From positions 248,001 through 312,000 of IMG/VR virus record IMGVR_UViG_3300023174_000036: 64,000 bases of DNA. The stretch is one strand, 5' to 3'. Of this stretch, positions 9,231-30,812 are shown in pieces (within the stretch, counting starts at the first letter, position 1; every line of letters begins with the position of its first letter). A program made the position numbers and the translations under genes. The notes beneath the pieces are model-generated. The model worked only from the letters and a program-made list of their open reading frames with translations. It had not been told where the DNA came from and searched no databases.

Positions 9231-9962
9231 TTATCCTATATGCATGGAAGTTTTTAAAAGTTTATCAATTGAATTTGCGGTTGGGTTGTTGTGTAACATT
9301 ATCCATGGGCTTGCGCTTTCATTGCGGGCCGCATGTTTAACTGCTGTGTTATACAAATAAACCCTGCCTTGTTCAAATGTATATTTACGATCCATATCTT
9401 CGCCAAATTTCCACCAGGCGTTGTCATCAATTTGAATTTGCAAATGCATCCTAATTAAAAATTCTGGATTTTGTATGTCCACATGAGTACGCAATCCCAC
9501 GTCTTGATTCATTTTTACCAAACGTGTTACTTCAAAACAATCCGGACCAAATGTATTATAATATGTTTCGTACATTCCAAACAAGTACTTTGGAAGATTC
9601 TTATTAAACTTTTTTTGAAAATCAGTGTCTGAGATTTCTGGAAATTGTGCTGGATCAGCAAGTTGCAAGAATGGAAGTTTTCCTGGTCTATCGTAAGACC
9701 ACTGAAGAGTCCACTGTAGTGGTTGCCCCCACACTAAATTATTTGGCATAAAAGACAGCGCAAATTCTTTTTTAGCTGGGTCGGCTAAATCCATATCATC
9801 CAGAGGGCTGTAACAACAATCGGCAAATTGTTCTTCTATGGCATTGAACCATTCCAACATTTTAGCAGAATCTACTGTGATGTTAGTTTGTATCACATCC
9901 CAGTCATAATTTTGAAGATCATCAAATGTATAATTTTCTGGATCTGTAATAAATCTATTCAT
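9231..9962 (-). CDS. Asp/Asn beta-hydroxylase-type 2OG-Fe(II) oxygenase
   Basis: LRTHVD...RMHLQI...KHAARN. Confidence 0.8.
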   Translation of the reverse strand: MNRFITDPENYTFDDLQNYDWDVIQTNITVDSAKMLEWFNAIEEQFADCCYSPLDDMDLADPAKKEFALSFMPNNLVWGQPLQWTLQWSYDRPGKLPFLQLADPAQFPEISDTDFQKKFNKNLPKYLFGMYETYYNTFGPDCFEVTRLVKMNQDVGLRTHVDIQNPEFLIRMHLQIQIDDNAWWKFGEDMDRKYTFEQGRVYLYNTAVKHAARNESASPWIMLHNNPTANSIDKLLKTSMHIG

Positions 9963-10023: not shown

Positions 10024-11277
10024 TTAGGCAGCTACTGATTTTACAACTGCAAAATTCAATACAGGAGCTTCAGCTACTGCAACTGCATTTGGAGTATAAA
10101 CACTGATTGTAAATGAATCCAATGCGGTATTAGTAACACTGACCATATGGAAGCCTGTGGCGGTTTTTACGCTTACTGATACCACATCAGTTGGATCAAC
10201 TATTGTGTTATTGACTGTGAATGTAGTCACTTGTCCAGCAGTGGCAGTTGTATTAAACAACGTGATAGTGCCGCATGGTGCATTGATAGTAACAGGAGTT
10301 GTTCTGCTAGTACCCTGCGATACAGCACTACCAGCACCTGTTCCGTAGCCAATACCAGCCGCTGAAATTTTAGATTTAGAAATAAACGCCGGGGCGGTCC
10401 ACACGCCTGGAGCAGTAAACTCGCTCAAATAAGCAGTTGCAAAATCATTTGGGGTATTGGGATTAACTAAAATAAATTGTAGTTTTCCCGAAGGTGCAAT
10501 GGTAGTGCCGTTACCCATGTTGGTTACATTGCCAACTATTCCAGCAACTGATGTAAAACCGTCCGAAGGAGCTACTGGAGTAGTTGTAAATCTTGCACGG
10601 AATTGTACTGCACCTAACCCGTCACCAACTTGCGAAATTTGTGGAGCTAACAATGTTCCACGCATTCCGCTGAATGACACGCCCTGAGTGAACGGCATTA
10701 TCTGTATGATATCCAATGACGGTTGTCCAGTATTTTGTGGACCAATTTGTACAACCTTTGCATCAGCACCGCCCAGCGAAAAAATAGTTGGGCCGTCAAT
10801 GGTGTTTGTATTTTGGCCGTTTATTTCAAGTTGGGTGCCAGTAAGTCTAGCTCCGGTAAGGTTAGCAGAAAATGTACCTGCTCCAGTGATATCAATGTTA
10901 CCTGTTCCTGTAATGCTTCGTGTATTTAAGTTTAAGTTTGAGCCTAATCCTGTGACAGACAACGTGCCGCTTACTGTGATACTACCTGTTCCGGTGATAT
11001 TTCTGTTGTTTAGATTTAAATTCCCGCCTAATGTTGGGTTAGTGTCTGCTTGTACACTTACAATACCCGTACCAGAACCGTTAAAGTCTAATCTCTGTGT
11101 AACGTTGTTCCAAACAAGTCCAGTGCCTGCACTAGATGCTAAGATGTTTTTGCCGCCAAGATTAACTCCGTCACCAACATATAGTTTATTGGTATCAGTA
11201 GTCCATACTATTTCACCCAAATCAAAGGCGGCGCTCGGTCTTTGAGCTTCTGTTCCTCGTCTAATACGTAGCGACAT
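10024..11277 (-). CDS. Tail fibre / virion fibre protein
   Basis: N-terminal LRIRRGT...LGEIVWTTDTNKLYVGDG (Mtd/hyaluronidase-type anchor); G/T/N-rich shaft with duplicated NLNLNxRxITGTG. Confidence 0.8.
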   Translation of the reverse strand: MSLRIRRGTEAQRPSAAFDLGEIVWTTDTNKLYVGDGVNLGGKNILASSAGTGLVWNNVTQRLDFNGSGTGIVSVQADTNPTLGGNLNLNNRNITGTGSITVSGTLSVTGLGSNLNLNTRSITGTGNIDITGAGTFSANLTGARLTGTQLEINGQNTNTIDGPTIFSLGGADAKVVQIGPQNTGQPSLDIIQIMPFTQGVSFSGMRGTLLAPQISQVGDGLGAVQFRARFTTTPVAPSDGFTSVAGIVGNVTNMGNGTTIAPSGKLQFILVNPNTPNDFATAYLSEFTAPGVWTAPAFISKSKISAAGIGYGTGAGSAVSQGTSRTTPVTINAPCGTITLFNTTATAGQVTTFTVNNTIVDPTDVVSVSVKTATGFHMVSVTNTALDSFTISVYTPNAVAVAEAPVLNFAVVKSVAA

Positions 11278-11371: not shown

Positions 11372-11992
11372 TTAACCCAATTGGGCATGACTTCCATCGC
11401 AGATTAACTGAGTTGTTCGTAATCTACACGTACATAACGGTAACGCATCAGTCATATCGGGTACTAAATTATCACTGTTATACAGCATACCCACGCTTAA
11501 TCGGTCCGCCGTGACTGATTTTACTCGATGCCAATATATGCTGGGGAAAATCAAAATTCTACCTGCTCGAAACTCAACAGTATGCAACAACGAATTGTTG
11601 TCATATTCTCCATAAAAATTTAAATCTCCAGCACCTTTGAGCATTACTACAGCGGCCCAGGTGTTAAACATTGGCCAATCCCTATGTATTGTGTTGGACG
11701 GATCCGTGCTTTTTGGCATGTCATGTATGAACATCTGATACATTTCTATGTTGGCATTTGAGTTTATTTCAAAAAACTTACTGTCTACCAAGGACTTTAG
11801 TTCTTTACACCAGTCAGGAGTCCATTCAGCCCACGTATTCCCGTTTGGCAAAAAATATGGCACACTGGTTTTCCAGTCAAGATTCTCCAATATCATCCAT
11901 GGCAGTTTTTCGCTAGTTGGTTGGAAATCAGTATCAAAGACAAAAATATTTTTTAAATCCATGACATATTTATAATGTAAAATTCCAGTCAA
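11372..11992 (-). CDS. 2OG-Fe(II) oxygenase with C-terminal CDGSH motif
   Basis: IHRD...RILIFPSIYWHRV...R; C-terminal CTCRLRTTQLICDGSH. Confidence 0.75.
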   Translation of the reverse strand: MTGILHYKYVMDLKNIFVFDTDFQPTSEKLPWMILENLDWKTSVPYFLPNGNTWAEWTPDWCKELKSLVDSKFFEINSNANIEMYQMFIHDMPKSTDPSNTIHRDWPMFNTWAAVVMLKGAGDLNFYGEYDNNSLLHTVEFRAGRILIFPSIYWHRVKSVTADRLSVGMLYNSDNLVPDMTDALPLCTCRLRTTQLICDGSHAQLG

Positions 11993-12029: not shown

Positions 12030-12635
12030 TTACATTGTGGGTCCGTTACCAGATTTAAATCCTACTGATCCGCCTTCTGCTTCAATGTTACGGATAACAT
12101 CTTCGAACAAGATAGGAGCAAAGTCCGGAGTTTGTTCCACGCATACGCAATGATAACGTGTATCGATATCGTCGCTGTAAAGGATTTCTCCAGTTCTAGC
12201 ATCAACTCCACGAGCCTTTTTCACACGATTTGCGTGTAAGTGTCCGTGAATGTTAACTCCAAAACGACCCATTGAATCTGAGTGTAACGGAATATGACTT
12301 AAGATCATTCCGTTCATAACGTGATAAGCTCTAAGTTCTCTAAAGTGGGCACGGTAGTCCTCATCTTTAAAGATATCGTGATTACCACGAATTAAAACTT
12401 TGTCTCCGTTAAGCCTACGCATGATTGCTAATGCTTTACGGTTGATCACAACATCGCCCAAATGGTACACCTTGTCAGTGGGCTTTACCCGTTCGTTCCA
12501 CGCCTTGACCATTGCTTCGTCCATTTCCTCAGCGGAGTCCCAAGGACGAAGTTTTGTAACACCATCGTTACGTGTGAAGCGGCATACACCTGTGTGTCCA
12601 AAGTGCGTGTCGCTTACTAAGAATACACTTGGCAT
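12030..12635 (-). CDS. Calcineurin-like metallophosphoesterase
   Basis: SDTHFGH, LGDV, GNHD, SHIP, HGHLH motifs. Confidence 0.9.
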   Translation of the reverse strand: MPSVFLVSDTHFGHTGVCRFTRNDGVTKLRPWDSAEEMDEAMVKAWNERVKPTDKVYHLGDVVINRKALAIMRRLNGDKVLIRGNHDIFKDEDYRAHFRELRAYHVMNGMILSHIPLHSDSMGRFGVNIHGHLHANRVKKARGVDARTGEILYSDDIDTRYHCVCVEQTPDFAPILFEDVIRNIEAEGGSVGFKSGNGPTM

Positions 12636-12650
12636 ATTATGCTCCTTTCT

Positions 12651-12824
12651 TTAATAAGTTTCTTTTACAATATTATACTCTTCGGCGGGCCATTTGGCCT
12701 TAAATTCATCAGACTTTACATACTCATTAAATGATTTAGCATCAAAAAACATTTTATGAAACTCTGTTTTCATTGAACCTTTTTTGGTTACTGTTAAGTA
12801 AACCGATTTTGCTTTGCCAGCCAT
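12651..12824 (-). CDS. Small hypothetical protein (57 aa, MAGKAKSVYL...)
   Basis: Translated by eye; AAGG SD upstream; fills the intergenic gap. Confidence 0.6.
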   Translation of the reverse strand: MAGKAKSVYLTVTKKGSMKTEFHKMFFDAKSFNEYVKSDEFKAKWPAEEYNIVKETY

Positions 12825-12850
12825 TGAGTACCTTTCTTGTTTAAGTAGTT

Positions 12851-12879
12851 ATTATACTACTTATTCCGCAATCAGTCAA
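12851..12879 (-). promoter_or_regulatory. Sigma70-like promoter TTGACT-N17-TATAAT
   Basis: Direct motif match. Confidence 0.75.
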
Positions 12880-13339
12880 CCGACCTAAAAGTTCGCCAAT
12901 CATCAATGTTTGGCTTTTCGTCCGTATCATAGGTCCATCCTAAAGCCTTCATCATACGATGTTTGACTAGCAGGTTAGGACTACGGAAACGTTCCGTATC
13001 GTTGAATCCCATCATAACACCAACTTCACAAACCGCACCCGATCTGCAAACGCCAGCATAGCAATGAACCACTACATTCATACGATTTTCCAATGCATGT
13101 TGTAGCAAACGAACTAACTCTGCGGCCTGCTCATGACTACATTTCATTGTTTCCTCTAGCACGGAATCTTTTTCTTCTACATCCAAGAACTCAAAATTGT
13201 GACGCTCTTTGAACTGATGTTTAGGTTCAGGTCGCCAGCTAGCTGGATCAACAATACTGATCAACATGCTATTAGGGCCAGCATCGTGATGAAATCCTGT
13301 TGGAATATCAGCGGCGGCCACATTTTCAATCCAAGGCAT
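12872..13339 (-). CDS. Cys-dependent (PTP-like) phosphatase
   Basis: VVVHCYAGVCRS (HCx5R). Confidence 0.8.
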   Translation of the reverse strand: MPWIENVAAADIPTGFHHDAGPNSMLISIVDPASWRPEPKHQFKERHNFEFLDVEEKDSVLEETMKCSHEQAAELVRLLQHALENRMNVVVHCYAGVCRSGAVCEVGVMMGFNDTERFRSPNLLVKHRMMKALGWTYDTDEKPNIDDWRTFRSVD

Positions 13340-13348
13340 AATGCCTCC

Positions 13349-13594
13349 TTATCTTTTCATTCGTTCGCTTGCAATTTGACAATCAATGCACATCTTGCAA
13401 CCTTTGACTGCTAGTTGTCTTGCTTTGGGAATTTCTTCTCCACATTCATCGCAATGACTTAAACTAGGGCCTGTGGGCAATGCCGCCCTAATCCTTGCTA
13501 CTGCATCAGCGTTCGCAGTAGTTGATAACAGCTGAGCCATATCGGATTCTTCTAAGTTGTCGCCTTGAATGCTTTCATACTCTCTAATGGTCAT
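13349..13594 (-). CDS. TraR/DksA-family C4 zinc finger protein
   Basis: CDECGEEIPKARQLAVKGCKMCIDCQ; N-terminal EESDMA resembles DxxDxA. Confidence 0.85.
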   Translation of the reverse strand: MTIREYESIQGDNLEESDMAQLLSTTANADAVARIRAALPTGPSLSHCDECGEEIPKARQLAVKGCKMCIDCQIASERMKR

Positions 13595-13603
13595 AATTTT
13601 TCC

Positions 13604-14065
13604 TTAAACAAACCAAATTTCTTCAAAACCTTCTTTGTTGGTAGGTTCTTCCCAATTGTCAATCATACCTTGTACAACTTCCCAAGGCACATCTTTACCT
13701 GGCCTGCTGGCTAAACGTTCTTTAAGAACGTCTACTGGCGGTGTACGGAACACAACTGCAATGTGCTTGTAATTTGGAAGCATATTAAACTTCCTAGCAC
13801 GACTTTTAACTGTGGTGCTAGTCTGATCCCAAATTACAGTATGTTCATGATCACGTGCAAATACTACTTGTTGAGCCATTAATTCTACTGCTGTAGGCAT
13901 ATAATCCTTAAACACTTCTGTGTAAGTCTTACCCCGTGTCTTTGCATAATCTTCTACAAACGGATCGGTACTGACCACAGTCAAACCCAAAGCCCAAATT
14001 TGATCTTTGATCCAAGTGCTTTTGCCTGCGGCAGGAACGCCAATTAACTGATAGCATACGGGCAT
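13604..14065 (-). CDS. P-loop kinase (AAA_33 / polynucleotide kinase-like)
   Basis: GVPAAGKST Walker A, IWDQT, RLASR lid. Confidence 0.8.
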   Translation of the reverse strand: MPVCYQLIGVPAAGKSTWIKDQIWALGLTVVSTDPFVEDYAKTRGKTYTEVFKDYMPTAVELMAQQVVFARDHEHTVIWDQTSTTVKSRARKFNMLPNYKHIAVVFRTPPVDVLKERLASRPGKDVPWEVVQGMIDNWEEPTNKEGFEEIWFV

Positions 14066-14279: not shown

Positions 14280-14308
14280 ATTATAACATCAAAAAGAAAC
14301 CCAGTCAA
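14280..14308 (-). promoter_or_regulatory. Sigma70-like promoter TTGACT-N17-TATAAT
   Basis: Direct motif match; -35 lies inside the upstream terminator stem. Confidence 0.75.
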
Positions 14309-14326
14309 CCTACGCCGACTGGGTTC
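14291..14326 (-). terminator. Intrinsic terminator of the DUF2828 gene
   Basis: GAACCCAGTC-GGCGTAGGTT-GACTGGGTTT-CTTTTT. Confidence 0.8.
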
Positions 14327-14351: not shown

Positions 14352-15764
14352 TTACAACTTGTAACGATCACTCATTACAGTCTTAAGCATGATGCCTTCT
14401 GGAGTGAATTGATCCATGTCAGCGGCTAGCAAGCTAGTCATGATTGATGGACTGAATCCACTTACCAATGCGGCACCACTCTTGTCTGCCTTAACAGGTA
14501 CGTTATCTGAACTGTTTAGGTTCCAGAAAACAATCTGTGGCACGCTGTAGCCTGCGGCTTCGAACTTGCGTTCGATCATTTCCATTGCGCTGTCGTCGTA
14601 ACGGGCGCATTGGTTGAACTGCATGTCTGACAAGATCAGCAACATGGCTGGCATGTCGCTAGCTGGTACTGAACCCTTAACCGCAACGTCTAGGATCTTG
14701 TCCATAGCCGCATGTAGATTAGTGCTCATGTCCCAATCACTCTTGCTCATTTGAGCAACCTTATCAACAATGTTACCCTTTAGAGTAACAAGTTGTGGCT
14801 TGTCTGAGAAAGTCAAGAATGTGTCCTTGAACACGCCCTTGTTCTTGTCTGCTAGGTACAAGCCCAAGCTGATTGAAACATCCATGCAAGTTACATTAGT
14901 GTTCTTTCCTGCTGGGCAAGACATAGAACCGCTAACGTCTACGATTGGCATGATGCTAGCATCTCCAACGTAGTTTGGCAAGCTGTCCCATTGTGCGATC
15001 ACATGGTCAGTTTCTGTCTTGTCAAACTTTGCACGGTAGCTACCGATCACGCCCTTAAGGACATCGTGTGGGAAAATTGCCGAAGCATTAACCTTCACTG
15101 ATGGATCCTTAGCAATCAGAGCCGCAACATACTCAGCGAATGCTGGGCTGTGACGGTTGAAAGCCTTCTTGTAGATTCGAGAAGCTACAGAAGGAACGTG
15201 ACTGAAGTTGATGTTATCCCAATCTCCTGCACACATTTGGGTTTCAACAACCTTTGTAAGTGCCACAAGGCTTTTACGATATTGCTTTGGAGTCATGCCA
15301 AAGAAGGCACGAACTTCAGCGGCAATTTGACCCTTACGAGGAGTCCACTTTGCGGCCAAACCGTTGTTAGCACGAAGGGCATCACCCAACATGGTATAAG
15401 CGGCTGACTTCAGCACTGGGTTTGAGAAGACAAAGATGTCATCCCAACGGCCCACTTCTGGAACCTTCTTCAACAGGGCCAAAGCGGCGTCTGGGTCACG
15501 CTTTTCTAGGTGTACTAGAATGTCGCGGAACAGTTGACGTTCACCTGCGCCACCACGGACATCACGTGCCCATTGTGCGATGCGTAGTGCAACGTCTTGA
15601 TTTTCCACATAAGCGGCAGTGAAGTCGCCTGTGATGTCCTTACCACGGCTTGCGCCAATGTTATAGAACAAGTCAACACAAGCCGAAGCTGTTGACTTAC
15701 GTGCCTTCATACCGTTTGCGGTACGGGCTTCTTGATTTGCTACTGCTGTTACAAATGCGTTCAT
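14352..15764 (-). CDS. DUF2828-family TROVE/VWA (Ro60-like) protein
   Basis: RDVRGGAGERQLF, GRWDD, AAKWTPR, INFSHVPSVA, MIDAS DVSGS, ILSDMQF, IVFWNL, VSGFS motifs. Confidence 0.85.
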   Translation of the reverse strand: MNAFVTAVANQEARTANGMKARKSTASACVDLFYNIGASRGKDITGDFTAAYVENQDVALRIAQWARDVRGGAGERQLFRDILVHLEKRDPDAALALLKKVPEVGRWDDIFVFSNPVLKSAAYTMLGDALRANNGLAAKWTPRKGQIAAEVRAFFGMTPKQYRKSLVALTKVVETQMCAGDWDNINFSHVPSVASRIYKKAFNRHSPAFAEYVAALIAKDPSVKVNASAIFPHDVLKGVIGSYRAKFDKTETDHVIAQWDSLPNYVGDASIMPIVDVSGSMSCPAGKNTNVTCMDVSISLGLYLADKNKGVFKDTFLTFSDKPQLVTLKGNIVDKVAQMSKSDWDMSTNLHAAMDKILDVAVKGSVPASDMPAMLLILSDMQFNQCARYDDSAMEMIERKFEAAGYSVPQIVFWNLNSSDNVPVKADKSGAALVSGFSPSIMTSLLAADMDQFTPEGIMLKTVMSDRYKL

Positions 15765-15778
15765 TTTAATTACCTTTA

Positions 15779-15835
15779 CAGAATGTGTTGTTTTTCGATT
15801 ATAAGTGAAAAATTGAATTTGCTGTTAACATTCTA
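15779..15835 (-). ncRNA. Y-like ncRNA copy 1 (57 nt, ACAGCAA family; loop CUUAUAA)
   Basis: TAGAATGT-TA-ACAGCAA...ACATTCTG; stem covaries with copies 2 and 3. Confidence 0.65.
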
Positions 15836-15842
15836 AATTTAA

Positions 15843-16008
15843 CAGGATCGTTGTTGACTGCTTTTATTTTACTCAGGCCATCACTCTGAGCTCGTTAGTC
15901 TTGTTTCAATAGTTGCCTTCAACGCTCGGTGTTTTTACGCACTCTACTCCACCAACTACCACAGTGTCTAACAATCCATAGTATATGAATGTTGCTGTAC
16001 CGATCCTA
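15843..16008 (-). ncRNA. Y-like ncRNA copy 2 (166 nt, ACAGCAA family)
   Basis: TAGGATCG-GT-ACAGCAA...CGATCCTG with internal hairpins. Confidence 0.65.
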
Positions 16009-16041: not shown

Positions 16042-16070
16042 ATTATAGTTGATCTACAATAGTTTGTCAC
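16042..16070 (-). promoter_or_regulatory. Sigma70-like promoter GTGACA-N17-TATAAT for ncRNA copies 2/1 and DUF2828
   Basis: Direct motif match. Confidence 0.65.
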
Positions 16071-16101: not shown

Positions 16102-16178
16102 TGGAGTGGGTGACAGGACTCGAACCTGCATGGAACGGATTTGCAATCCGGGGCCTAACCATTCAGCGGCACACCCAC
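16102..16178 (-). tRNA. tRNA-Cys(GCA)
   Basis: Cloverleaf, U73, encoded CCA. Confidence 0.95.
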
Positions 16179-16265: not shown

Positions 16266-16526
16266 TTATTTTACTTTGTTAAGATATTTGCGTGGTTCAA
16301 TTTCGCCACGTTGAATTTCTTCAAGCGCAGTAACAATGCTGTGAACATGTTCACGCTTATCACTTTCTTTATTTTGTCTGCGGATTTCTCTTGCACGTTC
16401 ACTTGCGATCAGCACAAGATTAAAACGATTTCCGCCTGCGTGAGCTGTACAAATTTCAGTGTCGATGCCAGGCCCACGACTAAGGTCAAGCGGTTTACGT
16501 ACTTGATTGAATATGCGTTGTTTCAT
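16266..16526 (-). CDS. rpoZ: RNA polymerase omega subunit-like protein
   Basis: GNRFNLVLIASERAREI...IVTALEEI matches omega NRFxLVLxAxxRAR...ALxEI. Confidence 0.8.
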   Translation of the reverse strand: MKQRIFNQVRKPLDLSRGPGIDTEICTAHAGGNRFNLVLIASERAREIRRQNKESDKREHVHSIVTALEEIQRGEIEPRKYLNKVK

Positions 16527-16546
16527 ATGTGCTCCGTTAAAATTAT

Positions 16547-16575
16547 ATTATACAGATAGTTTGTGGAAATGTCAA
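16547..16575 (-). promoter_or_regulatory. Consensus sigma70 promoter TTGACA-N17-TATAAT
   Basis: Perfect consensus. Confidence 0.85.
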
Positions 16576-17256
16576 TTACTTCGGCAAGCTCATGGAGTAT
16601 ACAGTTAAGCCACCATTTTTGGCATTGAAAAAATTTCTAAAATCAACTAATTTATTTTGAAAACTTGGATACACTTTGTGGATGCCAAATGTGTCAAATA
16701 AACTTTTAAATTCTTTATCAGTAAAAGATACTTCAAACGGACAATGCTCTTGATCTATGTATAATATATCAGATGAGTATTGTACTTTTACAACACGTTT
16801 TAATAATTTTCCATACTTGTTGTAAATACCAATTACAACTTTGTCAGTTGCCAATTCATGTATTTTACTCACTGCTTGTTTGTATTTGGGCATATGATGT
16901 AGCACACCGTTAGACAACACTAAATCGTAAGTTTTATCAGTATTCCAAGTTAGAAAATCTTCTTTGTAATAGCTGATATTATAGATGCCATGATTGTTAC
17001 TAAACTGTTTGGCAACGTCAATACTGTCACTGAAGTCAACAGCATCAAATAGTATGTTAGGATGCCTACGTGCTAGGAAGTTGATGATAAATCCGCTTCC
17101 GCATCCAATATCTAAAACTGAACTTGACTGTGATACTGCATCATCAAATATTTTTAAATAGTCATTGCACACTGTACTATCGTAAAATTTCAAATCTTCA
17201 ATAGTATATGTTCCTGGAAATTGCAAACGCGAATAAAATTCTTTAACCTCATTCAT
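16576..17256 (-). CDS. Class I SAM-dependent methyltransferase
   Basis: VLDIGCGSG, AVDFS, YDLVLSNGVLHH. Confidence 0.9.
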   Translation of the reverse strand: MNEVKEFYSRLQFPGTYTIEDLKFYDSTVCNDYLKIFDDAVSQSSSVLDIGCGSGFIINFLARRHPNILFDAVDFSDSIDVAKQFSNNHGIYNISYYKEDFLTWNTDKTYDLVLSNGVLHHMPKYKQAVSKIHELATDKVVIGIYNKYGKLLKRVVKVQYSSDILYIDQEHCPFEVSFTDKEFKSLFDTFGIHKVYPSFQNKLVDFRNFFNAKNGGLTVYSMSLPK

Positions 17257-17893
17257 CTGTCTTTATTACACCAGTTATACTTTTAATATGTTCTTCATAT
17301 TTTGATTCTATTGCAAATAACAAATGAACTCTGTCCGAATTTCCATCATTGTACACACTGTGAATGTCTCTAGTGTCACACAAATATGCTTGTCCTGGTT
17401 GATCAAGTGGTTGATAACCATTCCATGTTAACCATTTAGCATCCTTGCTGGTGTATATTGGAACATGAACTCTGATTAAGTAATCTTCGTCTTTGTGCGG
17501 AACAATATGCGCACCCGGCACAAACACAGTTAAACTAACTTGTTTGGCATATGGACATATTTCCATCAGTTTTTTGATTATGCCAAACACCATAGGTGTT
17601 TGTTTTTCAGTTGCCAAATGTTCTGAACCGTACACAAAGTCCTTGTGTATATTGGTCCATGGCACTACTTTTTTGTTCTCACTCAGTATTTCAGGAACAG
17701 TGATAGCCCAACCAGATGCATTGCGTTTTTTGTTATATTGATTATTAAAATTATAGATGTCATCTCGAATATCCCCGGGGTTATCCATGTAAGACCAATT
17801 GTATTCTTGGTACGATAATCTAAGTTCGTCGTAGTAAGAACGCAGTTGATTTAAATCAATTTGGAAGTTTAAACGTTCAACAGAATCTTTCAT
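17249..17893 (-). CDS. Asp/Asn beta-hydroxylase-type 2OG-Fe(II) oxygenase
   Basis: PGAHIVPHKD...RVHVPI...IHSVYN...RVHL. Confidence 0.85.
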   Translation of the reverse strand: MKDSVERLNFQIDLNQLRSYYDELRLSYQEYNWSYMDNPGDIRDDIYNFNNQYNKKRNASGWAITVPEILSENKKVVPWTNIHKDFVYGSEHLATEKQTPMVFGIIKKLMEICPYAKQVSLTVFVPGAHIVPHKDEDYLIRVHVPIYTSKDAKWLTWNGYQPLDQPGQAYLCDTRDIHSVYNDGNSDRVHLLFAIESKYEEHIKSITGVIKTDE

Positions 17894-17899
17894 GATAAT

Positions 17900-19792
17900 T
17901 TAAAATTGTACTACTGACCCTAAAATTCTCCGCTCAGCCAATAACAAATTTCCATAAGTGTATTGGTTTGACCGTGTAACATCTTCGTAGAATTCTCTTT
18001 CGTCTTTATATAAATCAAAAGATATCTTTTTAATAAAACCTCTAGAAGTATTCAATCGCTTTGCACTGTAAATTATATTTCCTTCGTTATACACTAACGA
18101 CGGCGTGACACCTTTTTCAACAAACCATTTTTCAACAATAGGTCCAAGATTTTCATAATGTTTGAAATATTCCACAATAAAATAAATGAATCTATGTACC
18201 TGTGGCCCATCGTTGTTTAACCATGTTAAATTATGAAATGTCTCATTTATCTCGTCAGACACGAGTTCATCCAGATGTTTTTCAAAATGAGTGAATGATT
18301 CTAAACTAGCTAATTTTAACAACGGATAGCATTCATTATAAAACTGTCTTAAGAAATCTCCAAATTTTATATTTTTTATTGTTAACAACTGGTTAATAGA
18401 TTTCCGATAGACTCCACTTTGATTAAAGAAAATATATAGTGCATATGCAGTTGTGAATTCTTTATAGTCACTTCTTGTAAATGTACCACCTTCAACAACA
18501 ATTTCACTAGGAATACCATCAGGTGCCTGGTCAGCACGTTTGAGAGCTGTTTTAATACCCCATTTGGCTCTGTATTCTTTTTCATAACTTTCAGCTTCAG
18601 GTAACAGGTACCATTCATATGCTCGCACTAATATTTGTTTTTCGTACGGTATATTAAATTCATTGTACCATGTATCCAACGTGGTACCTGGAAGTCCCAT
18701 AATGATTTCAATAGTGGCTTCGTAACCAAACCCTGTTCGGAGGTAATCTGCTAATTCGAAATGCTCATTGGCTCGTAAGTCTGTGCGCTTGATGTTCTCC
18801 AATATTTCAGGAGTAAACGACTGTTGAGATATCTTATATGCATAAGACAATTTATTAACAGCCTCAATAGTAAAGATACGCTTTAAATAATCAAAGTGTT
18901 TGTTAGTTTTAGCATATCCGCCGTATTGCACATTTGGAAATCGATCTTTTGGATAATTTTGTTTTCTATCCGCAATGTATTGTACTATTTCAACATCGCG
19001 TTCGCCGTTAATTCCAAAATTAGCATCGCACACGTACACACTGCTGATATTATAACTCAGCAATATGTCTAAATCTTTTTTGACACAATCCAAATCTTTT
19101 AGAATTACTTTGGTGCCGATGCCGCCACCCCAATCACAAAATGTGCATTCGTAAGGACAACCCCTAGTTGTTTCAATTTTGCTGTGTAATGTTGGATTTT
19201 CTGAATTTGCATAGTAGTAATTGACATATTCTTGTATGTAATCTTTCTGCGATTCAAAAGCAGAAAAGTTCCATTTGAAATCTCGTTTGTAAGATGCTTT
19301 TGGACTACGCAACATCATGGAACGATCTTTGCTAGGATAAACCATTTGTTCTACAGTGTTCCAATTGATAGTATTTTCATCTGTTAAATTATCTAGTATA
19401 TCAGCAATAGCAATCTCGCCATATACTTCGCTGGGTAAACTTGCATCAATAAACCAATTTTTCTGAAACCAGTCTGCATGATGTTTAAAATATTGGTGGG
19501 GACCGCCTGTAACAATTATACATTTTGGCCATTGTTGTTTTGCCCATTTCAACAATGCCATTGTTCTATCATAATTCCATACATATAAACTCACGCCTAG
19601 AATATCAGGAGGATTTAATGCCAGCACACGTTTGTTATCTTCTATATCATTATGAACTTCAGAAGTTGGCAATATCCAATTGTACTTTTCAGGATGGTTG
19701 CCATACAATTCATAAAATGTTTTTGCACTGGGCCATAATACCGGGATAAAATCATTCCAGCCAGTTAGTGATAAAAGTTGTATGTTTTTCAT
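17900..19792 (-). CDS. B12-binding-domain radical SAM protein
   Basis: ILGVSLYVWN...VTGGPH N-terminal domain; TTRGCPYECTFCDW; IMGLPG. Confidence 0.85.
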   Translation of the reverse strand: MKNIQLLSLTGWNDFIPVLWPSAKTFYELYGNHPEKYNWILPTSEVHNDIEDNKRVLALNPPDILGVSLYVWNYDRTMALLKWAKQQWPKCIIVTGGPHQYFKHHADWFQKNWFIDASLPSEVYGEIAIADILDNLTDENTINWNTVEQMVYPSKDRSMMLRSPKASYKRDFKWNFSAFESQKDYIQEYVNYYYANSENPTLHSKIETTRGCPYECTFCDWGGGIGTKVILKDLDCVKKDLDILLSYNISSVYVCDANFGINGERDVEIVQYIADRKQNYPKDRFPNVQYGGYAKTNKHFDYLKRIFTIEAVNKLSYAYKISQQSFTPEILENIKRTDLRANEHFELADYLRTGFGYEATIEIIMGLPGTTLDTWYNEFNIPYEKQILVRAYEWYLLPEAESYEKEYRAKWGIKTALKRADQAPDGIPSEIVVEGGTFTRSDYKEFTTAYALYIFFNQSGVYRKSINQLLTIKNIKFGDFLRQFYNECYPLLKLASLESFTHFEKHLDELVSDEINETFHNLTWLNNDGPQVHRFIYFIVEYFKHYENLGPIVEKWFVEKGVTPSLVYNEGNIIYSAKRLNTSRGFIKKISFDLYKDEREFYEDVTRSNQYTYGNLLLAERRILGSVVQF

Positions 19793-20506: not shown

Positions 20507-21165
20507 ACATATTAATATGCGGAGACAGTTTTGCCGCCGACTGGACAGTTAAATATTCTGGCCAAGGATGGCCAAATTTATTAGCACAGGAGTTTGCTGT
20601 GACTAATCTAGCACAAGCCGGTTGTAGTGAATACAAAATTCTCAAACAATTGGAATCAGTTGATTTAGCTGTGTATGATAAAATTGTCATTTCGCATACC
20701 AGTCCTTATAGGATTTATATCAAAAAACATCCTATACACTACAACGATCCTCTGCACAAAAATTGTGATTTAATCTATACAGATATAAAAGAACATGTAC
20801 TAAAAGATCAAACATTACAACCTATGGTTGACTATTTTGAAAATCATTTTGATTTTGAACATGCAAAATACATGCATACTTTGTTGTGTGAAAAGATAAT
20901 AAAATTATTGGAACCAGTACAAGATCGTGTGTTGCATATTTCCAATATAGATTGGGAAGACTTGTATCAATTTTCAAACATGGTTAATTTTTCTTATTTG
21001 TTTGAAACAAATAGGGGATTGATGAACCATTTTGATTTGGAGGGCAATCAAATTGTATTTAATAGACTCAAAAATTTATTGCAATTGGTTGCGGGGCTTG
21101 GATTTGAACCAAGGATGGCAATGGCTTATGAGACCACGCTGGTGACCGGACCCTCCCCGCGATAA
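20503..21165 (+). CDS. SGNH-like hypothetical protein
   Basis: ICGDSFAAD, NLAQAGCS, C-terminal NH; 3' end runs antisense through a tRNA. Confidence 0.6.
   Translation: MNILICGDSFAADWTVKYSGQGWPNLLAQEFAVTNLAQAGCSEYKILKQLESVDLAVYDKIVISHTSPYRIYIKKHPIHYNDPLHKNCDLIYTDIKEHVLKDQTLQPMVDYFENHFDFEHAKYMHTLLCEKIIKLLEPVQDRVLHISNIDWEDLYQFSNMVNFSYLFETNRGLMNHFDLEGNQIVFNRLKNLLQLVAGLGFEPRMAMAYETTLVTGPSPR
21086..21161 (-). tRNA. tRNA-Met(CAT), initiator-like (C1xA72) with atypical D arm
   Basis: CGCGGGG/CCCCGCA-A-CCA, loop CT-CAT-AA. Confidence 0.8.
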
Positions 21166-21176
21166 CTTATAGTGGT

Positions 21177-21803
21177 TTATGTTGCAATGTCGTAATCTAA
21201 ATTGCCAGCAATACATATCCTATACTCGTCGCTGGTATAAAACGGATGAACGCTATGTGACATCCTTGATGGAAACATAATCATCCTACCTTCCCAACTA
21301 TTATCAACTGGCATGGCATTTAATTGCACTTGACCTAACACATCTGTGTAATGTATATTGAATGAAGGACCTGTTATTGATGTTTTTTCCGATAAAGTAT
21401 TGTGATTTAATTCGTCTGCCATCATAAATGGTACTCGCAACCAGATTACAAAACTAAGTATTCCTTCATGAAAGTGTGCAGACATAAATTCTGTTTTTTC
21501 TTGAAAATTCACCCAACATTTTGTTATCTTTAATTTTCGATTAGTATTCAAATCTCTATAATTAAATGTTGATTTAAACTCGTTCGTTAATGGAATTATT
21601 TTTGACTCTAGATAACTTAAACAATCTATTATTGCAAATTCTTTTTTTACATTGCCGGCATGAAAATGATTTACAAAACTAGCATTCTCGCTATTGAGAA
21701 TAGAATTAACTTCTTTCCACAGAGGTTTTAATTCATCATCTGAAAGCGAGTTTCCTAAAATACCTATATTGGGAAAATGTAGTTGTAAACTTTGATCTAA
21801 CAT
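21177..21803 (-). CDS. 2OG-Fe(II) oxygenase (phage TIGR02466-like)
   Basis: CWVN...HFH...MFPSRMSHSV...RICIAGN. Confidence 0.8.
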   Translation of the reverse strand: MLDQSLQLHFPNIGILGNSLSDDELKPLWKEVNSILNSENASFVNHFHAGNVKKEFAIIDCLSYLESKIIPLTNEFKSTFNYRDLNTNRKLKITKCWVNFQEKTEFMSAHFHEGILSFVIWLRVPFMMADELNHNTLSEKTSITGPSFNIHYTDVLGQVQLNAMPVDNSWEGRMIMFPSRMSHSVHPFYTSDEYRICIAGNLDYDIAT

Positions 21804-24894: not shown

Positions 24895-24986
24895 TGGTAC
24901 CAGCGGAGGGGATCGAACCCTCTCAAGAACGCTAATCTGGCGCTAAAAGTCTTATAAGGACTCTCTGACTACCAAGTCTCGCTGGC
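24895..24986 (-). tRNA. Atypical tRNA with TAT anticodon (Ile by anticodon), long variable arm, reduced D arm
   Basis: GCCAGCG/CGCTGGT-A-CCA, loop CT-TAT-AA, 92 nt. Confidence 0.75.
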
Positions 24987-25401: not shown

Positions 25402-25660
25402 ATAAGAAATTAGTAAAAAGCTCTGAGAAGTTTTGGTCCGCACTCAAGCGAAACATGGCTACCCGCGGTTCACAGCCGCGCCCTACTTGTCTAGCAAACA
25501 TGGAGTATCACTTACTTTCGAGGATCTCCCGGACTGTAATCCTGATCCACCACCCGGTTGAAGTGCAGTTTATAACTGCAAAATCATTTGAGGCTTCCGA
25601 CCTTTGATGATTACTCTTGCGAGACTTCTCGATACCTTGAGCCTTTTACTAATTGCTTAT
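25402..25660 (-). ncRNA. Unassigned ~255-nt multibranch structured RNA
   Basis: ~22-bp interrupted closing stem (AATTAGTAAAA/TTTTACTAATT), nested GAGAAGT/ACTTCTC, GNRA-capped hairpins. Confidence 0.55.
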
Positions 25661-26268
25661 GAAAATTCTGGACGTTTAAAATTTATATTAAACGAAATAC
25701 TTATACGTTCATCATCTGTGTAATTTGCAGGAACACCGTGATTTAACCAGCCCGGAAACAAAATAAATTTACCAATCTTAGGTTCGTAAGATACGTTGTT
25801 TGGAAGATGTTCAAGCAAATATGTTGAAAACTGCGGAACTGGATTCATAAAATTTATGCTGCCGTCATCGCCATTTGTTCTGTAATAATAAACACCTGCA
25901 ATGTCTACACTGCCATGATTGTGTGTATGTGCAAATTCATTTTTTCCAGTATTGGTCATCCAAGATTGTATAATTCTAAATTCTTGTATCTTGCTCACTG
26001 GCACGTCTAGCATTCGCATGTACTCAAACACATGAAACTTCAAAGCGTCAATAAACGCAGTGGTTTGATAGTCCAACAGTAGATTGGATTCGAACGATGT
26101 GTCTGACAATTTGTGTGTGTTTGGCAACCATTGCTCGTTGTGTTTGAACGAATCCTTTGCTTTCAAATCCGCAACTACCCGATCTAATTCTGATTGTACT
26201 GCAATTAATTCGTCGCCCTCAATCACACTGTTATAAATTGGTGTTGCAAAGTATCCATGAACGCTCAT
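25657..26268 (-). CDS. 2OG-Fe(II) oxygenase (phage TIGR02466-like)
   Basis: SWMT...HTHNH...LFPGWLNHGV...RISISFN. Confidence 0.85.
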   Translation of the reverse strand: MSVHGYFATPIYNSVIEGDELIAVQSELDRVVADLKAKDSFKHNEQWLPNTHKLSDTSFESNLLLDYQTTAFIDALKFHVFEYMRMLDVPVSKIQEFRIIQSWMTNTGKNEFAHTHNHGSVDIAGVYYYRTNGDDGSINFMNPVPQFSTYLLEHLPNNVSYEPKIGKFILFPGWLNHGVPANYTDDERISISFNINFKRPEFS

Positions 26269-26747: not shown

Positions 26748-26804
26748 CAGGATGCTTATTTTTCAATTAAAAGTTGAATTTTTGAATTTGCTGTTCGCAT
26801 CCTA
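26748..26804 (-). ncRNA. Y-like ncRNA copy 3 (57 nt, ACAGCAA family; Lys(UUU)-like anticodon arm)
   Basis: TAGGATGC-GA-ACAGCAA...TTCAA-CTTTTAA-TTGAA...GCATCCTG. Confidence 0.65.
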
Positions 26805-28026: not shown

Positions 28027-28112
28027 TGGTGGAGTATCCTGGGATCGAACCAGGCGTGCCATTACGACGGCGGATTTACAGTCCACTGCATCACCATTGA
28101 TGCTTCTACTCC
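28027..28112 (-). tRNA. tRNA-Tyr(GTA)
   Basis: Long variable arm, CCA. Confidence 0.95.
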
Positions 28113-30225: not shown

Positions 30226-30250
30226 AAAAAAGGCACTCGAAAGTGCCTTC
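30226..30250 (-). terminator. Terminator after tmRNA
   Basis: AAGGCACT-TTCG-AGTGCCTTTTTT. Confidence 0.85.
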
Positions 30251-30592: not shown

Positions 30593-30608
30593 TATCTCTT
30601 TAACCACA

Positions 30609-30812
30609 TTACTGTGGTTGAATATTTGCTGCCTGCAAGCCTTTTTGACCTTGTACTACATCAAATGATACTGATTGATTCTCTTGCAGAACTTTGAATC
30701 CTGATGTCTGAATCGCTGAGTAGTGAGCAAACAAATCCTCACCACCGTTGTCTGGAGTAATAAACCCAAAACCTTTGGTTTCATTAAACCATTTTACTTT
30801 ACCTGTTGCCAT
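30609..30812 (-). CDS. cspA: Cold-shock protein
   Basis: [15 protein letters not shown] (RNP1), DLFAHYS (RNP2). Confidence 0.95.

What the first reader, a model, noticed from the sequence alone, without database searches (positions are those of the whole stretch)
14352..16008. Ro60-like (DUF2828) gene with a family of Y-like ncRNAs sharing a covarying stem and ACAGCAA
Seen: three minus-strand elements share UAGRAUSN-NN-ACAGCAA ... NSAUYCUG. Copy 1 (15779-15835) is TAGAATGT/ACATTCTG, copy 2 (15843-16008) is TAGGATCG/CGATCCTG, and copy 3 (26748-26804, in the tRNA array) is TAGGATGC/GCATCCTG. Changes at stem positions 4, 7 and 8 are all compensated while ACAGCAA is invariant. Copies 1 and 2 lie between a sigma70 promoter and the DUF2828 start, and copy 1 ends 14 nt before the ATG. 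Established: TROVE/VWA Ro60 (Rsr) proteins bind Y RNAs through a conserved stem and in some bacteria are co-operonic with RNA-repair genes. Inference: this is a phage Ro60-like protein with its own class of Y-like RNA partners, which I do not recognise as a described family.
Basis: partly seen in the sequence, partly recalled or inferred. Interest (0 to 1): 0.9.

Follow-up and report, generated by a model that had tools for sequence, protein, structure and literature searches.

The report
Ro60-like protein with ACAGCAA partner RNAs
A jumbo phage encodes a ring-shaped Ro60-like protein next to small structured RNAs (a 7-bp stem plus ACAGCAA) that recur beside this protein family in hundreds of phages and bacteria and closely resemble the unexplained Class I RNAs of social amoebae.

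Summary
Three minus-strand elements (15779-15835, 15843-16008, 26748-26804) share UAGRAUNN-NN-ACAGCAA...NNAUYCUG with compensated stems; none is expected by chance.

The 470-aa DUF2828/DUF7788 protein folds like Ro60 (HEAT ring plus vWA with an intact MIDAS). Its eight best PDB matches are all Ro60/TROVE proteins, although Pfam TROVE does not match.

The RNA is a large, uncatalogued family:
- 135 distinct variants lie upstream of 72 of 80 related phage genes, all on the gene strand.
- A covariance model finds it next to DUF2828 genes in at least 43 of 80 divergent bacterial and archaeal loci, and in E. coli, Listeria and Mycobacterium phages.
- It finds nothing in the phage T5 tRNA region.
- All stem pairs covary.

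Some members carry a YrlA-like tRNA-like module. Others are tRNA-like RNAs whose anticodon loop is replaced by hairpin-NN-ACAGCAA. RtcB or Rnl ligases are frequent neighbours.

Best reading: a second Ro60/Y-RNA-type particle, probably acting in tRNA repair or quality control. Binding and expression are untested.

The family consensus matches Dictyostelium Class I RNAs (Rfam RF01414, 23-29 bits, below threshold). Whether they are the same family is open.

The parts
16042..16070 (-). Sigma-70-like promoter (GTGACA, 17-nt spacer, TATAAT) in front of copy 2, copy 1 and the gene
   Evidence: 11 of 12 consensus positions. A consensus match only; no transcript data.
15843..16008 (-). Copy 2: 166-nt member. 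The closing stem is 16008-16001 with 15850-15843, ACAGCAA is at 15998-15992, and a conserved structured cargo of about 135 nt lies inside.
   Evidence: Model R2 scores it 28.4 bits, E 0.036. 36 distinct orthologues of this class were listed. 28 of them, aligned, keep internal hairpins, at least one with compensated changes by eye (CTCAG/CTGAG versus CACAG/CTGTG). No Rfam match for the cargo.
15779..15835 (-). Copy 1: 57-nt minimal member in the 5' UTR. The stem is 15835-15828 with 15786-15779 and ACAGCAA is at 15825-15819. It ends 14 nt before the ATG and 3 nt before the AAGG Shine-Dalgarno sequence.
   Evidence: R1 73.1 bits and R2 65.1 bits. Rfam RF01414 23.9 bits over the full model. The AGAAUGY class holds this position in nearly all related phage loci.
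14352..15764 (-). Gene for the 470-aa Ro60-like protein (DUF2828 plus DUF7788/vWA). The MIDAS residues are D276, S278, S280, T348 and D380.
   Evidence: Pfam. PHROG 850 'RNA-binding protein', E 6e-141. Alignment A1 invariants. Model pLDDT 90.6, pTM 0.89. Foldseek top 8 are all Ro60/TROVE. The profile against PDB sequences hits Ro60/TROVE only weakly, E 0.045-0.17.
14297..14326 (-). Intrinsic-terminator-like hairpin with a U tract that closes the promoter-RNA-RNA-gene unit
   Evidence: 13 pairs, followed by CTTTTT.
26748..26804 (-). Copy 3: 57-nt minimal member inside the tRNA array, 4 nt after tRNA-Glu. The stem is 26804-26797 with 26755-26748 and ACAGCAA is at 26794-26788.
   Evidence: R1 61.9 bits and R2 63.4 bits. 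Rfam RF01414 23.0 bits, E 0.024.
12030..14065 (-). Downstream genes that may heal RNA ends: AAA_33 P-loop kinase (13604-14065), DksA/TraR zinc finger (13349-13594), DSP/PTP phosphatase (12872-13339) and metallophosphoesterase (12030-12635). Their membership in the system is inferred only.
   Evidence: A separate promoter-like site lies at 14308-14280. No RNA ligase was found among the larger ORFs of the window that were scanned.

Best explanation
The locus encodes a ribonucleoprotein of the Ro60/Y-RNA type, built from a different protein branch and a different RNA recognition element.

The DUF2828/DUF7788 protein is a Ro60-like HEAT-repeat ring with a vWA/MIDAS domain. I infer that it binds small RNAs through a module made of a 7-bp terminal stem, variable in sequence but based on A-R-G paired with C-Y-U, plus the single-stranded ACAGCAA two nucleotides after the 5' arm.

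The rest of each RNA is an exchangeable cargo. In this window the cargo is either minimal (copies 1 and 3) or a conserved 135-nt structured insert (copy 2). In relatives it can be a YrlA-like circularly permuted tRNA-like domain. In a further form the module sits in place of the anticodon loop of an otherwise normal tRNA-like RNA.

Copies 2 and 1 are transcribed with the gene from their own promoter, and copy 3 with the tRNA array. All would then be trimmed to the protected stem. By analogy with Rsr/YrlA, the cargo would tether the ring to tRNA-handling enzymes. The particle would help the phage repair or clear damaged tRNA and structured RNA during infection. Copy 1, which abuts the ribosome-binding site, may also let the protein repress its own translation.

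Shown here: the fold, the RNA structure by covariation, and the genomic association. Inferred: binding, processing, tethering, the repair role and the autoregulation.
For: Protein:
- The eight best Foldseek matches are all Ro60/TROVE over about 500 aligned columns.
- The MIDAS residues are invariant in 51 homologues at 40-57% identity.
- The best sequence-profile hits in the PDB are Ro60/TROVE.
- Homologues are annotated 'Ro-like RNA binding protein' in mycobacteriophages.

RNA:
- There are 198 motif hits in 72 of 80 related phage loci, all on the gene strand, each with a 3' arm that complements the stem from its second base (7 nt). The 17 copies with U at that base (TTGGAT) are the exception: their partner is TCATCCTG, leaving a U-U at the base.
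- In a 52-member diverse alignment 94.7% of cells pair and all 8 pairs change on both sides. The covariation score is 0.746 against 0.278 for shuffles (0 of 500 reach it) and 0.07-0.24 for slid controls.

Association:
- ACAGCAA occurs 171 times upstream on the gene strand in 80 divergent loci. It occurs 8 times on the opposite strand upstream, 21 and 19 times downstream, and 5-27 times for permuted motifs.
- All 81 R2 hits at E<=1 are on the gene strand.
- Elements flank the gene in Escherichia phage REP6, Listeria phage LP-125 and Mycobacterium phage DirkDirk.
- There is no hit in T5 positions 1-50000, which hold 25 tRNAs and no homologue of the protein.

Y-RNA likeness:
- YrlA model hits score 40.1, 39.8, 37.7, 33.6, 30.8 and 29.1 bits, carried by the tRNA-like module.
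- 10 of 11 over-long tRNA-like hits carry hairpin-NN-[A/G]CAGC[A/U]A at the anticodon position.

Repair context:
- The next gene is an Rnl-type ligase in L110 and L123.
- RtcB is the next gene in L160 and lies about 1.3 kb downstream, after four small genes, in LP-125.
- In the window a kinase and two phosphoesterases lie downstream.
Against: - No transcript, processing or binding data exist for any member.
- Pfam TROVE does not match. Foldseek TM-scores are only 0.4-0.6, so the protein is a distant relative and its RNA-binding surface cannot be transferred from Ro60.
- None of the three window copies has a tRNA-like module.
- The association was measured around DUF2828 genes, which is an ascertainment bias. 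The only negative control is part of one phage genome.
- 16 divergent loci with at least 2 kb of upstream sequence had no exact-motif element.
- No RNA ligase was found among the window ORFs that were scanned.
- The one protein shown to bind a Class I RNA directly in Dictyostelium is an RRM protein, not a Ro-like one.
Confidence: 0.66

Rival explanations
1. The elements are cis-acting signals rather than partner RNAs. They would be recognition or stop sites for the nucleases that cut polycistronic tRNA and mRNA precursors, or a translational operator in the 5' UTR. The link to DUF2828 would then reflect only shared residence in tRNA-rich modules.
For: Copy 1 ends 3 nt before the Shine-Dalgarno sequence. 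Copy 3 and many relatives sit 4-10 nt from tRNA ends. Many lineages keep a copy just upstream of the gene.
Against: The T5 tRNA region has none. Up to 5-6 copies with different large cargos occur per locus, which a simple operator or cleavage signal does not need. The same module is built into tRNA-like and YrlA-like RNAs. The invariant single-stranded ACAGCAA persists across hosts as different as Mycobacterium, Listeria, E. coli and an archaeon, which points to a co-travelling reader rather than host nucleases.
Confidence: 0.14
2. The RNAs are tRNA decoys or sponges that act without the DUF2828 protein. They would soak up host anticodon nucleases, tRNA-modifying enzymes or an RRM-type protein. 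The neighbouring gene would be functionally separate.
For: tRNA-like bodies occur in many members. The known direct binder of Dictyostelium Class I RNA is the RRM protein Rnp1A.
Against: Minimal members, including copies 1 and 3 here, have no tRNA-like part yet keep the stem and ACAGCAA. In the tRNA-like forms the anticodon loop, which is the nuclease target, is the part replaced. Strand-specific adjacency to the gene holds down to 32% protein identity.
Confidence: 0.12
3. The elements are a dispersed DNA repeat, such as a miniature inverted-repeat element or a recombination site, with no RNA-level function.
For: Short terminal inverted repeats bracket inserts of variable length (49-265 nt).
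Against: Orientation follows the gene in 198 of 198 and 81 of 81 cases. The arms covary instead of being conserved. The conserved ACAGCAA is on one side only. No target-site duplication was seen in the sequences read.
Confidence: 0.03

Closest known systems
Bacterial and phage Ro60 (Rsr) with YrlA/Yrn1 Y RNAs (Chen et al. 2014, PMC4201824; Rfam RF02553)
   Same: - A ring-shaped HEAT-repeat plus vWA protein is encoded on the same strand within about 2 kb of its small RNAs.
[quoted passage not shown]
- In many members the effector part is a tRNA-like domain (T arm, closed acceptor hairpin, D arm).
- RtcB or other RNA ligase genes are frequent neighbours.
   Different: - The protein is DUF2828/DUF7788, not Pfam TROVE; identity to solved Ro60 structures is 10-17%.
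- The recognition element is a 7-bp stem plus single-stranded ACAGCAA, not the GNCGAAN0-1G helix.
- YrlA scores reach only 29-40 bits against a gathering score of 69.
- Many members have no tRNA-like part, and a permuted form with the module in a tRNA anticodon position exists.
- Chen et al. searched only genomes annotated with TROVE proteins.
Dictyostelium Class I RNAs (Rfam RF01414; Kjellin et al. 2021, PMC7919456)
   Same: - Length is about 60 nt (the median here is 61).
- A short covarying stem joins the 5' and 3' ends.
- Class I starts AAG and ends CUGU. The consensus here is A64 A70 R97 at the start and Y96 U74 G93 U69 at the end.
- ACAGCAA lies right after the 5' arm.
- The rest is variable and A/U-rich.
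- Both are multi-copy, clustered genes.
- The same minor variants, GCAGCAA and ACAGCUA, occur in both sets.
- RF01414 is the best Rfam match for the minimal members, over the full model length.
   Different: - Scores are 23-29 bits against a gathering score of 41.5.
- The linker is one nucleotide shorter, and only ACAGCAA of the 11-nt CCUUACAGCAA is fixed (the full 11-mer occurs in L100).
- The hosts are bacteria and phages, with no DUSE promoter.
- Class I RNAs were reported as unique to Dictyostelia and are bound by the RRM protein Rnp1A.
- Whether Dictyostelia encode a DUF2828 protein could not be checked here.
Thermus phage phiLo Ro60 (PDB 9l5y/9kop; PMC12135203)
   Same: It is a phage-encoded Ro60-type ring and the best structural match to the model (E 1.7e-7, TM 0.59/0.60).
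   Different: It is a recognised TROVE protein with 16-17% identity to the window protein. No ACAGCAA RNAs are known for it.
Other TROVE-module particles (TEP1 with vault or telomerase RNA); own knowledge
   Same: A TROVE-type ring plus vWA domain is dedicated to a class of small structured RNAs.
   Different: These are eukaryotic multi-domain proteins with unrelated RNAs. They were not examined here.

Membership tests
Ro60/TROVE proteins | Match to the Pfam TROVE domain (PF05731) | tested here: not met
   One search lists only DUF7788 and DUF2828 at E<=0.01. No NCBIfam model matches.
Ro60/TROVE proteins | HEAT-repeat ring followed by a vWA domain (overall fold) | tested here: met
   The Foldseek top 8 are all Ro60/TROVE structures, with 504-550 aligned columns and TM up to 0.60. 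The model has pLDDT 90.6.
Ro60/TROVE proteins | MIDAS motif in the vWA domain | tested here: met
   D276-x-S278-x-S280, T348 and D380 are invariant in 51 sequences. This stretch aligns to the Ro60 MIDAS in the profile search.
Ro60/TROVE proteins | Binds Y RNA on the outer ring surface and single-stranded RNA ends in the central hole | not testable with these tools
   No protein-RNA modelling or binding assay is available.
YrlA-type bacterial Y RNA (RF02553) | Reaches the Rfam gathering score (69 bits) | tested here: not met
   The window has no hit. The best hits in relatives are 40.1, 39.8 and 37.7 bits.
YrlA-type bacterial Y RNA (RF02553) | tRNA-like domain (T arm, closed acceptor hairpin, D arm) enclosed by the terminal stem | tested here: inconclusive
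   It is present in relatives: L056:2318-2440, L034, L020, L022, L094, L163 and the L161 RNA annotated as 'tRNA-Thr'. It is absent from all three window copies.
YrlA-type bacterial Y RNA (RF02553) | GNCGAAN0-1G motif near the 5' end (the proposed Rsr contact; Chen 2014) | tested here: not met
   The conserved columns of A2, A4 and A6 hold ACAGCAA instead. In the YrlA alignment the basal stem is forced onto non-homologous bases.
YrlA-type bacterial Y RNA (RF02553) | Encoded next to a TROVE Ro60 gene | tested here: not met
   The neighbouring gene is DUF2828/DUF7788.
Dictyostelium Class I RNA (RF01414) | Reaches the Rfam gathering score (41.5 bits) | tested here: not met
   Scores are 23.9, 23.0, 28.6 and 28.1 bits, each over the full model 1-56.
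Dictyostelium Class I RNA (RF01414) | Short stem joining the 5' and 3' ends, kept by compensatory changes | tested here: met
   7 well-supported pairs, all with changes on both sides.
Dictyostelium Class I RNA (RF01414) | 11-nt motif CCUUACAGCAA next to the 5' arm (near-invariant U3, C6, C9, A10, A11) | tested here: inconclusive
   ACAGCAA is 84-100% conserved, so C6, C9, A10 and A11 are met. The U3 equivalent is U in 55%. The linker is 1 nt shorter. The exact 11-mer occurs in L100:656-673.
Dictyostelium Class I RNA (RF01414) | Starts AAG, ends CUGU, about 60 nt long | tested here: met
   The consensus of 80 distinct hits is A64 A70 R97 ... Y96 U74 G93 U69, with median length 61. The window copies read UAG...CUGU.
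Dictyostelium Class I RNA (RF01414) | DUSE promoter about 60 nt upstream; dictyostelid host | tested here: not met
   These are phage and bacterial loci with sigma-70-like or tRNA-operon contexts.

The most novel reading that the evidence does not exclude
The stem-plus-ACAGCAA RNAs and the Class I RNAs of dictyostelid amoebae would be one RNA family, read by DUF2828 Ro60-like proteins.

If so, Class I RNAs are not an amoeba-specific invention. They would be the eukaryotic branch of a widespread prokaryotic and phage Y-RNA-like system, possibly acquired from bacterial prey or their phages. Their conserved stem and CCUUACAGCAA would be the docking site of a Ro60-like ring.

[quoted passage not shown] DUF2828 also occurs in plants, so similar RNAs may exist there. 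One Arabidopsis candidate scored 40 bits in the published outgroup scan.
Probability: 0.45. Interest if true: 0.92.

Novelty: new variant of a known kind. Interest (0 to 1): 0.82.

Why it matters
Ro60/Y-RNA particles are known from animals and from the roughly 5% of bacteria that carry a TROVE protein. This locus shows a second, apparently much more common branch. More than 6,000 representative DUF2828 proteins exist, and 706 cultured phages carry one, including Felix O1-like coliphages, Listeria P100-like phages and mycobacteriophages. This branch has its own RNA recognition code.

It gives a function-level hypothesis for an uncharacterised protein family. It explains odd features of phage tRNA arrays, such as over-long 'tRNAs' and 'tRNA-OTHER' annotations. 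It also offers easy laboratory systems for studying how phages protect or repair their translation machinery.

If the match to Dictyostelium Class I RNAs reflects common descent, it would supply a missing protein partner and an origin for an abundant RNA class whose mechanism has been open since 2004.

Tried and rejected
- **Rfam.** At gathering thresholds the window and 20 divergent loci gave only tRNA, tmRNA and one freshwater-1 hit. No family covers the elements.
- **YrlA or Y_RNA in the window copies.** No hit even at E<=10.
- **Sequence searches of the protein.** The single sequence finds nothing in the PDB. The profile gives only weak Ro60/TROVE hits. NCBIfam gives nothing.
- **Nearest cultured phages by DNA.** No close relative.
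- **Thermodynamic stability.** The single elements are not unusually stable (z -0.9 to -1.8). The support comes from covariation, not energy.
- **A fourth window copy.** The candidate at 20594-20610 (1 mismatch) lies in coding-looking sequence, has no closing arm, and is not found by either model. Rejected.
- **My stem-finder script.** It allows one G-U pair over 300 nt and accepts about 60% of random motifs, so I used raw motif counts and covariance-model hits instead.
- **Terminator reading.** Rejected: the loops are large and no U tract follows.
- **Dictyostelium protein check.** I could not find out whether DDB_G0281243 or any dictyostelid protein is DUF2828. No paper or supplement held here says so. 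The protein search tools list only the closest relatives, which are all phage-like.
- **RNA ligase in the window.** None was found among the ORFs scanned.
- **Prior descriptions.** Literature searches for DUF2828, PF11443, DUF7788 and Ro-like phage RNAs found no earlier description.
Full report
**Observation**

- Copy 1 (15835->15779): TAGAATGT-TA-ACAGCAA...ACATTCTG.
- Copy 2 (16008->15843): TAGGATCG-GT-ACAGCAA...CGATCCTG.
- Copy 3 (26804->26748): TAGGATGC-GA-ACAGCAA...GCATCCTG.

The exact pattern occurs three times against none in 100 shuffles. The bare heptamer is not enriched window-wide.

Copies 2 and 1 lie between a sigma-70-like site (16070-16042, 11 of 12) and the ATG at 15764. Copy 1 ends 14 nt before the ATG. 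A terminator-like hairpin follows the gene at 14326-14297. The unit is therefore promoter, RNA, RNA, gene, terminator. Copy 3 sits 4 nt after the CCA end of tRNA-Glu in a 28-gene tRNA array.

The window is part of a 356-kb IMG/VR contig with no close cultured relative.

**The protein**

ORF 14352-15764(-), 470 aa, matches Pfam DUF7788 (E 3e-49) and the C-terminal part of DUF2828 (E 3e-24). It does not match TROVE. It also matches PHROG 850 'RNA-binding protein'.

The family is very large. There are 6,232 representatives at E<1e-3 among 50%-identity clusters.

In an alignment with 50 homologues at 40-57% identity, a DxSxS...T...D MIDAS set and an RDxRGGxGER block are invariant or nearly so. With that alignment AlphaFold2 gives pLDDT 90.6 and pTM 0.89.

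Foldseek against the PDB returns only Ro60/TROVE structures as its eight best matches:
- Thermus phage phiLo Ro60 (9kop, 9l5y)
- Xenopus Ro (1yvr, 1yvp)
- D. radiodurans Rsr (2nvo)
- human Ro60 (9nfa, 9nep)

Their E-values run from 1.7e-7 to 8e-5, with about 500 aligned columns and TM up to 0.60. The hits that follow are isolated vWA domains at E>0.02. The sequence profile also ranks Ro60/TROVE first, but weakly (E 0.045-0.17).

So 'Ro60-like' is justified as a fold statement. The protein is a distant paralogue, not a recognisable TROVE member.

**The RNA family in close relatives**

317 viral contigs encode relatives of the protein, and I fetched the best 80 (85-100% identity). A motif scan found 198 elements in 72 loci, all on the gene strand. 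Each has a 3' arm that complements the stem from its second base (7 nt), 49-265 nt downstream. The 17 TTGGAT copies are the exception: their partner is TCATCCTG, which leaves a U-U at the base. Seven of the eight loci without a hit have under 100 nt of upstream sequence.

There are 135 distinct sequences. The inner stem positions run through CG, GA, AC, GC, GG, AG and GT, each with its complement.

The members fall into size classes:
- Minimal, 49-63 nt. These include a class that always sits in the 5' UTR, like copy 1.
- 116-132 nt.
- About 160 nt, like copy 2. Its cargo is conserved and keeps internal hairpins.
- 200-265 nt.

The 116-132-nt class holds GGTTCGAATCC, then a closed hairpin, then TAGCTCAnTGGTAGAGC. 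That is a circularly permuted tRNA-like domain. It hits Rfam YrlA at 40.1 bits (E 2e-5 in the 59-kb search; 6e-8 when only that 181-nt stretch was searched), with three more hits at 29-34 bits. The match is carried by the tRNA-like part. The basal stem does not align with YrlA's.

**The RNA family in distant relatives**

A profile scan of one genome per prokaryotic species returned 80 loci. Protein identity is 32-68%, and the hosts are Clostridia, Akkermansia, Chloroflexota, Gammaproteobacteria, Treponema, a Woesearchaeote and others. Most look like phage or prophage DNA.

ACAGCAA counts in these loci:

| Region and strand | Count |
|---|---|
| Upstream, gene strand | 171 |
| Upstream, opposite strand | 8 |
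| Downstream, gene strand | 21 |
| Downstream, opposite strand | 19 |
| 20 permuted control motifs (upstream, gene strand) | 5-27 |

A covariance model built from the phage minimal forms (R1) found 55 hits, 53 on the gene strand. A second model built from 52 diverse members (R2) found 81 hits at E<=1, all on the gene strand, in 43 of the 80 loci by my count of the list. It also found the three window copies and nothing else in the window.

On the diverse alignment:
- 94.7% of cells pair.
- All eight pairs show changes on both sides.
- The covariation score is 0.746, against 0.278 for shuffles (0 of 500 reach it) and 0.07-0.24 for slid partners.
- The outermost U-G is weak (18 of 50 unpaired), so the stem is 7 bp.

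The alignment was fitted to the model, which favours pairing. The slid controls and the independent regex results argue that the signal is real.

The consensus of 80 distinct hits is A64 A70 R97 G82 N4 N2 A84 C100 A97 G100 C100 A97 A93 ... C82 Y96 U74 G93 U69. The median length is 61 nt.

**A permuted form**

Rfam tRNA hits of 109-138 nt occur upstream of many of these genes. Ten of eleven carry, in place of the anticodon loop, a 6-7-bp hairpin followed by NN and ACAGCAA, or its variants GCAGCAA and ACAGCUA.

This is the same two-dimensional object as the YrlA-like form, opened at the acceptor end instead of at the module stem. The conserved unit is therefore 'helix, two nucleotides, single-stranded ACAGCAA'. 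What it is attached to varies.

**Cultured phages and a control**

tblastn finds the protein in 706 phage records. These include Felixounavirus on E. coli and Salmonella, Listeria P100-like phages, Staphylococcus, Enterococcus, Campylobacter and Vibrio phages, and mycobacteriophages where it is annotated 'Ro-like RNA binding protein'.

R2 finds elements in each phage I examined:
- Escherichia phage REP6: right after the gene, inside the tRNA array. One is the annotated 131-nt 'tRNA-Thr', which is really a module with a tRNA-like cargo.
- Listeria phage LP-125: upstream of the gene, with RtcB downstream.
- Mycobacterium phage DirkDirk: downstream of the gene, including a YrlA-like member at 39.8 bits.

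Phage T5 positions 1-50000 hold 25 tRNAs, several stable RNAs and no homologue of the protein. That region has no R2 hit at E<=10. The element is therefore not a general feature of phage tRNA arrays. This is one partial genome only.

**Neighbours**

In the window the genes after the terminator encode an AAA_33 kinase, a DksA/TraR zinc finger, a DSP-type phosphatase and a metallophosphoesterase. This set could heal RNA ends, but it has its own promoter-like site, and I found no ligase among the window ORFs scanned.

Of ten downstream ORFs that I picked by size from eight of the divergent loci (two from L133), two are Rnl-type ligases with a PHA02142 OB domain. One more, the second ORF after the gene in L133, matches RNA_ligase weakly and below the Pfam cut-off. 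One is RtcB, and three are class V aminotransferases. LP-125 has RtcB 1.3 kb downstream. This mirrors the rsr-yrlBA-rtcBA arrangement known from Salmonella (PMC4201824; PMC7790460 appeared in the search).

**Mechanism**

What is shown: a Ro60-like fold, an RNA helix maintained by selection, an invariant adjacent single strand, and strand-specific adjacency across very wide divergence.

What I infer:
- The ring binds the helix plus ACAGCAA. In Ro60 the contacts are also mainly to the 5' strand of the Y RNA helix (Chen 2014 citing Stein 2005).
- The RNAs are cut out of the gene transcript or the tRNA precursors.
- The cargos tether partners, as YrlA tethers Rsr to PNPase.
- The particle serves tRNA and structured-RNA repair or clearance during infection.
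- Copy 1, flush with the ribosome-binding site, may additionally give autoregulation. That placement is tight only in this phage group.

The rivals are a pure cis signal, a protein-independent decoy, and a DNA repeat. They are listed with their evidence. I consider them less likely because of the multi-copy, multi-cargo architecture, the persistence of the element across unrelated hosts, and the covariation.

**The Dictyostelium connection**

The best Rfam match of the minimal members is RF01414, Class I RNA of Dictyostelium. It always covers the full model, and its ends coincide with the element ends:
- 23.9 bits for copy 1
- 23.0 bits for copy 3
- 28.6 bits for L073
- 28.1 bits for L100

All are below the 41.5-bit gathering score. 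Scores near 25 also arise by chance in whole eukaryotic genomes, so the score alone proves nothing.

The feature list of Kjellin et al. nevertheless coincides with the consensus derived here independently:
- about 60 nt;
- start AAG;
- a covarying 6-7-bp terminal stem with an invariant G-C;
- ACAGCAA directly after the 5' arm;
- a variable A/U-rich remainder;
- end CUGU;
- clustered multi-copy genes.

The minor variants seen in dictyostelid sequences, GCAGCAA and ACAGCUA, are the ones seen here. L100 even has the full CCUUACAGCAA.

Kjellin et al. reported the class as unique to Dictyostelia after scanning eukaryotes and one bacterium. The DdR-21 pull-down yielded Rnp1A, GuaB, NdkC and the uncharacterised DDB_G0281243. 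I could not determine whether that protein, or any dictyostelid protein, belongs to DUF2828. I therefore treat common descent as an open, testable hypothesis with a probability of about 0.45.

**Novelty and verdict**

No Rfam family, paper or preprint available to me describes the RNA family or characterises DUF2828. The only prior hint is the annotation label 'Ro-like'.

I class the finding as a new variant of a known kind, the Ro60/Y-RNA particle. It has an unusually wide distribution, ready laboratory models, and a possible bridge to a long-standing puzzle in amoebae.

Noticed in passing
window 30226-30644 (-): A two-piece (circularly permuted) tmRNA gene on the phage contig. Rfam tmRNA_permuted scores 136 bits and beta_tmRNA 126 bits, and ARAGORN predicts a tag peptide.
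   Followed up: no
window 16105-16178 (-), 28030-28112 (-), 24895-24986 (-): Rfam calls a tRNA (43 bits) that ARAGORN missed, just upstream of the promoter of the unit. There is also a weak tRNA-like hit (33 bits) and a 92-nt tRNA-Ile(UAU), which is unusually long.
   Followed up: no
window 9231-9962, 11372-11992, 16266-19792, 21177-21803, 25657-26268 (-): Putative modification enzymes lie in and around the tRNA array: three 2OG-Fe(II) oxygenases, two Asp/Arg-hydroxylase-like proteins, a radical-SAM/B12-binding protein, a SAM methyltransferase and an Rpb6/omega-like protein.
   Followed up: no
window 10024-11277 (-): A 417-aa protein has an Mtd_N (major tropism determinant) N-terminal domain. 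This hints at a target of a diversity-generating retroelement.
   Followed up: no
L100:1007-1068 (Micavibrio MAG contig): A freshwater-1 RNA (Rfam RF02979, 82.7 bits, above its gathering score) sits among the ACAGCAA elements and tRNA-like RNAs just upstream of the DUF2828 gene.
   Followed up: no
L162:1429-1980 (Listeria phage LP-125): A ROOL RNA match (87 bits, E 1e-16, under the gathering score of 99) lies about 1 kb upstream of the DUF2828 gene, with RtcB downstream. ROOL may belong to the same RNA-handling neighbourhood.
   Followed up: no
L161:5327-5457 (Escherichia phage REP6): The annotated 131-nt 'tRNA-Thr_GGT' straddles the end of one stem-plus-ACAGCAA element and the start of the next (L161:5377-5511), whose cargo begins with a T arm and, just past the annotation, a D-arm-like stretch. 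The neighbouring 'tRNA-OTHER' may be related. This is probably a misannotation common in Felixounavirus records.
   Followed up: partly
L127, L128, L133 (Clostridia loci), gene after the DUF2828 gene: A class V aminotransferase (cysteine-desulfurase-like) directly follows the DUF2828 gene in three loci. A second ORF with a weak RNA-ligase match follows it in L133.
   Followed up: no
L164:28000-41600 (phage T5): T5 carries several annotated stable and tRNA-like RNAs of unknown function in its tRNA region. None matches the ACAGCAA model.
   Followed up: partly
Supplemental Table S4 of PMC7919456: The published outgroup scan lists one Arabidopsis candidate (ath_can_1) at 40 bits, with a closing stem, AUUACAGCAA and a CUG end. 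The papers found mention DUF2828 in potato, poplar, wheat and Casuarina, so plants carry the domain and this candidate may deserve a look.
   Followed up: no
window 43497-45425 (-): The phage encodes a full-length Hsp70/DnaK (E 4e-258). Ribonucleotide reductase subunits lie at 52967-57044.
   Followed up: no
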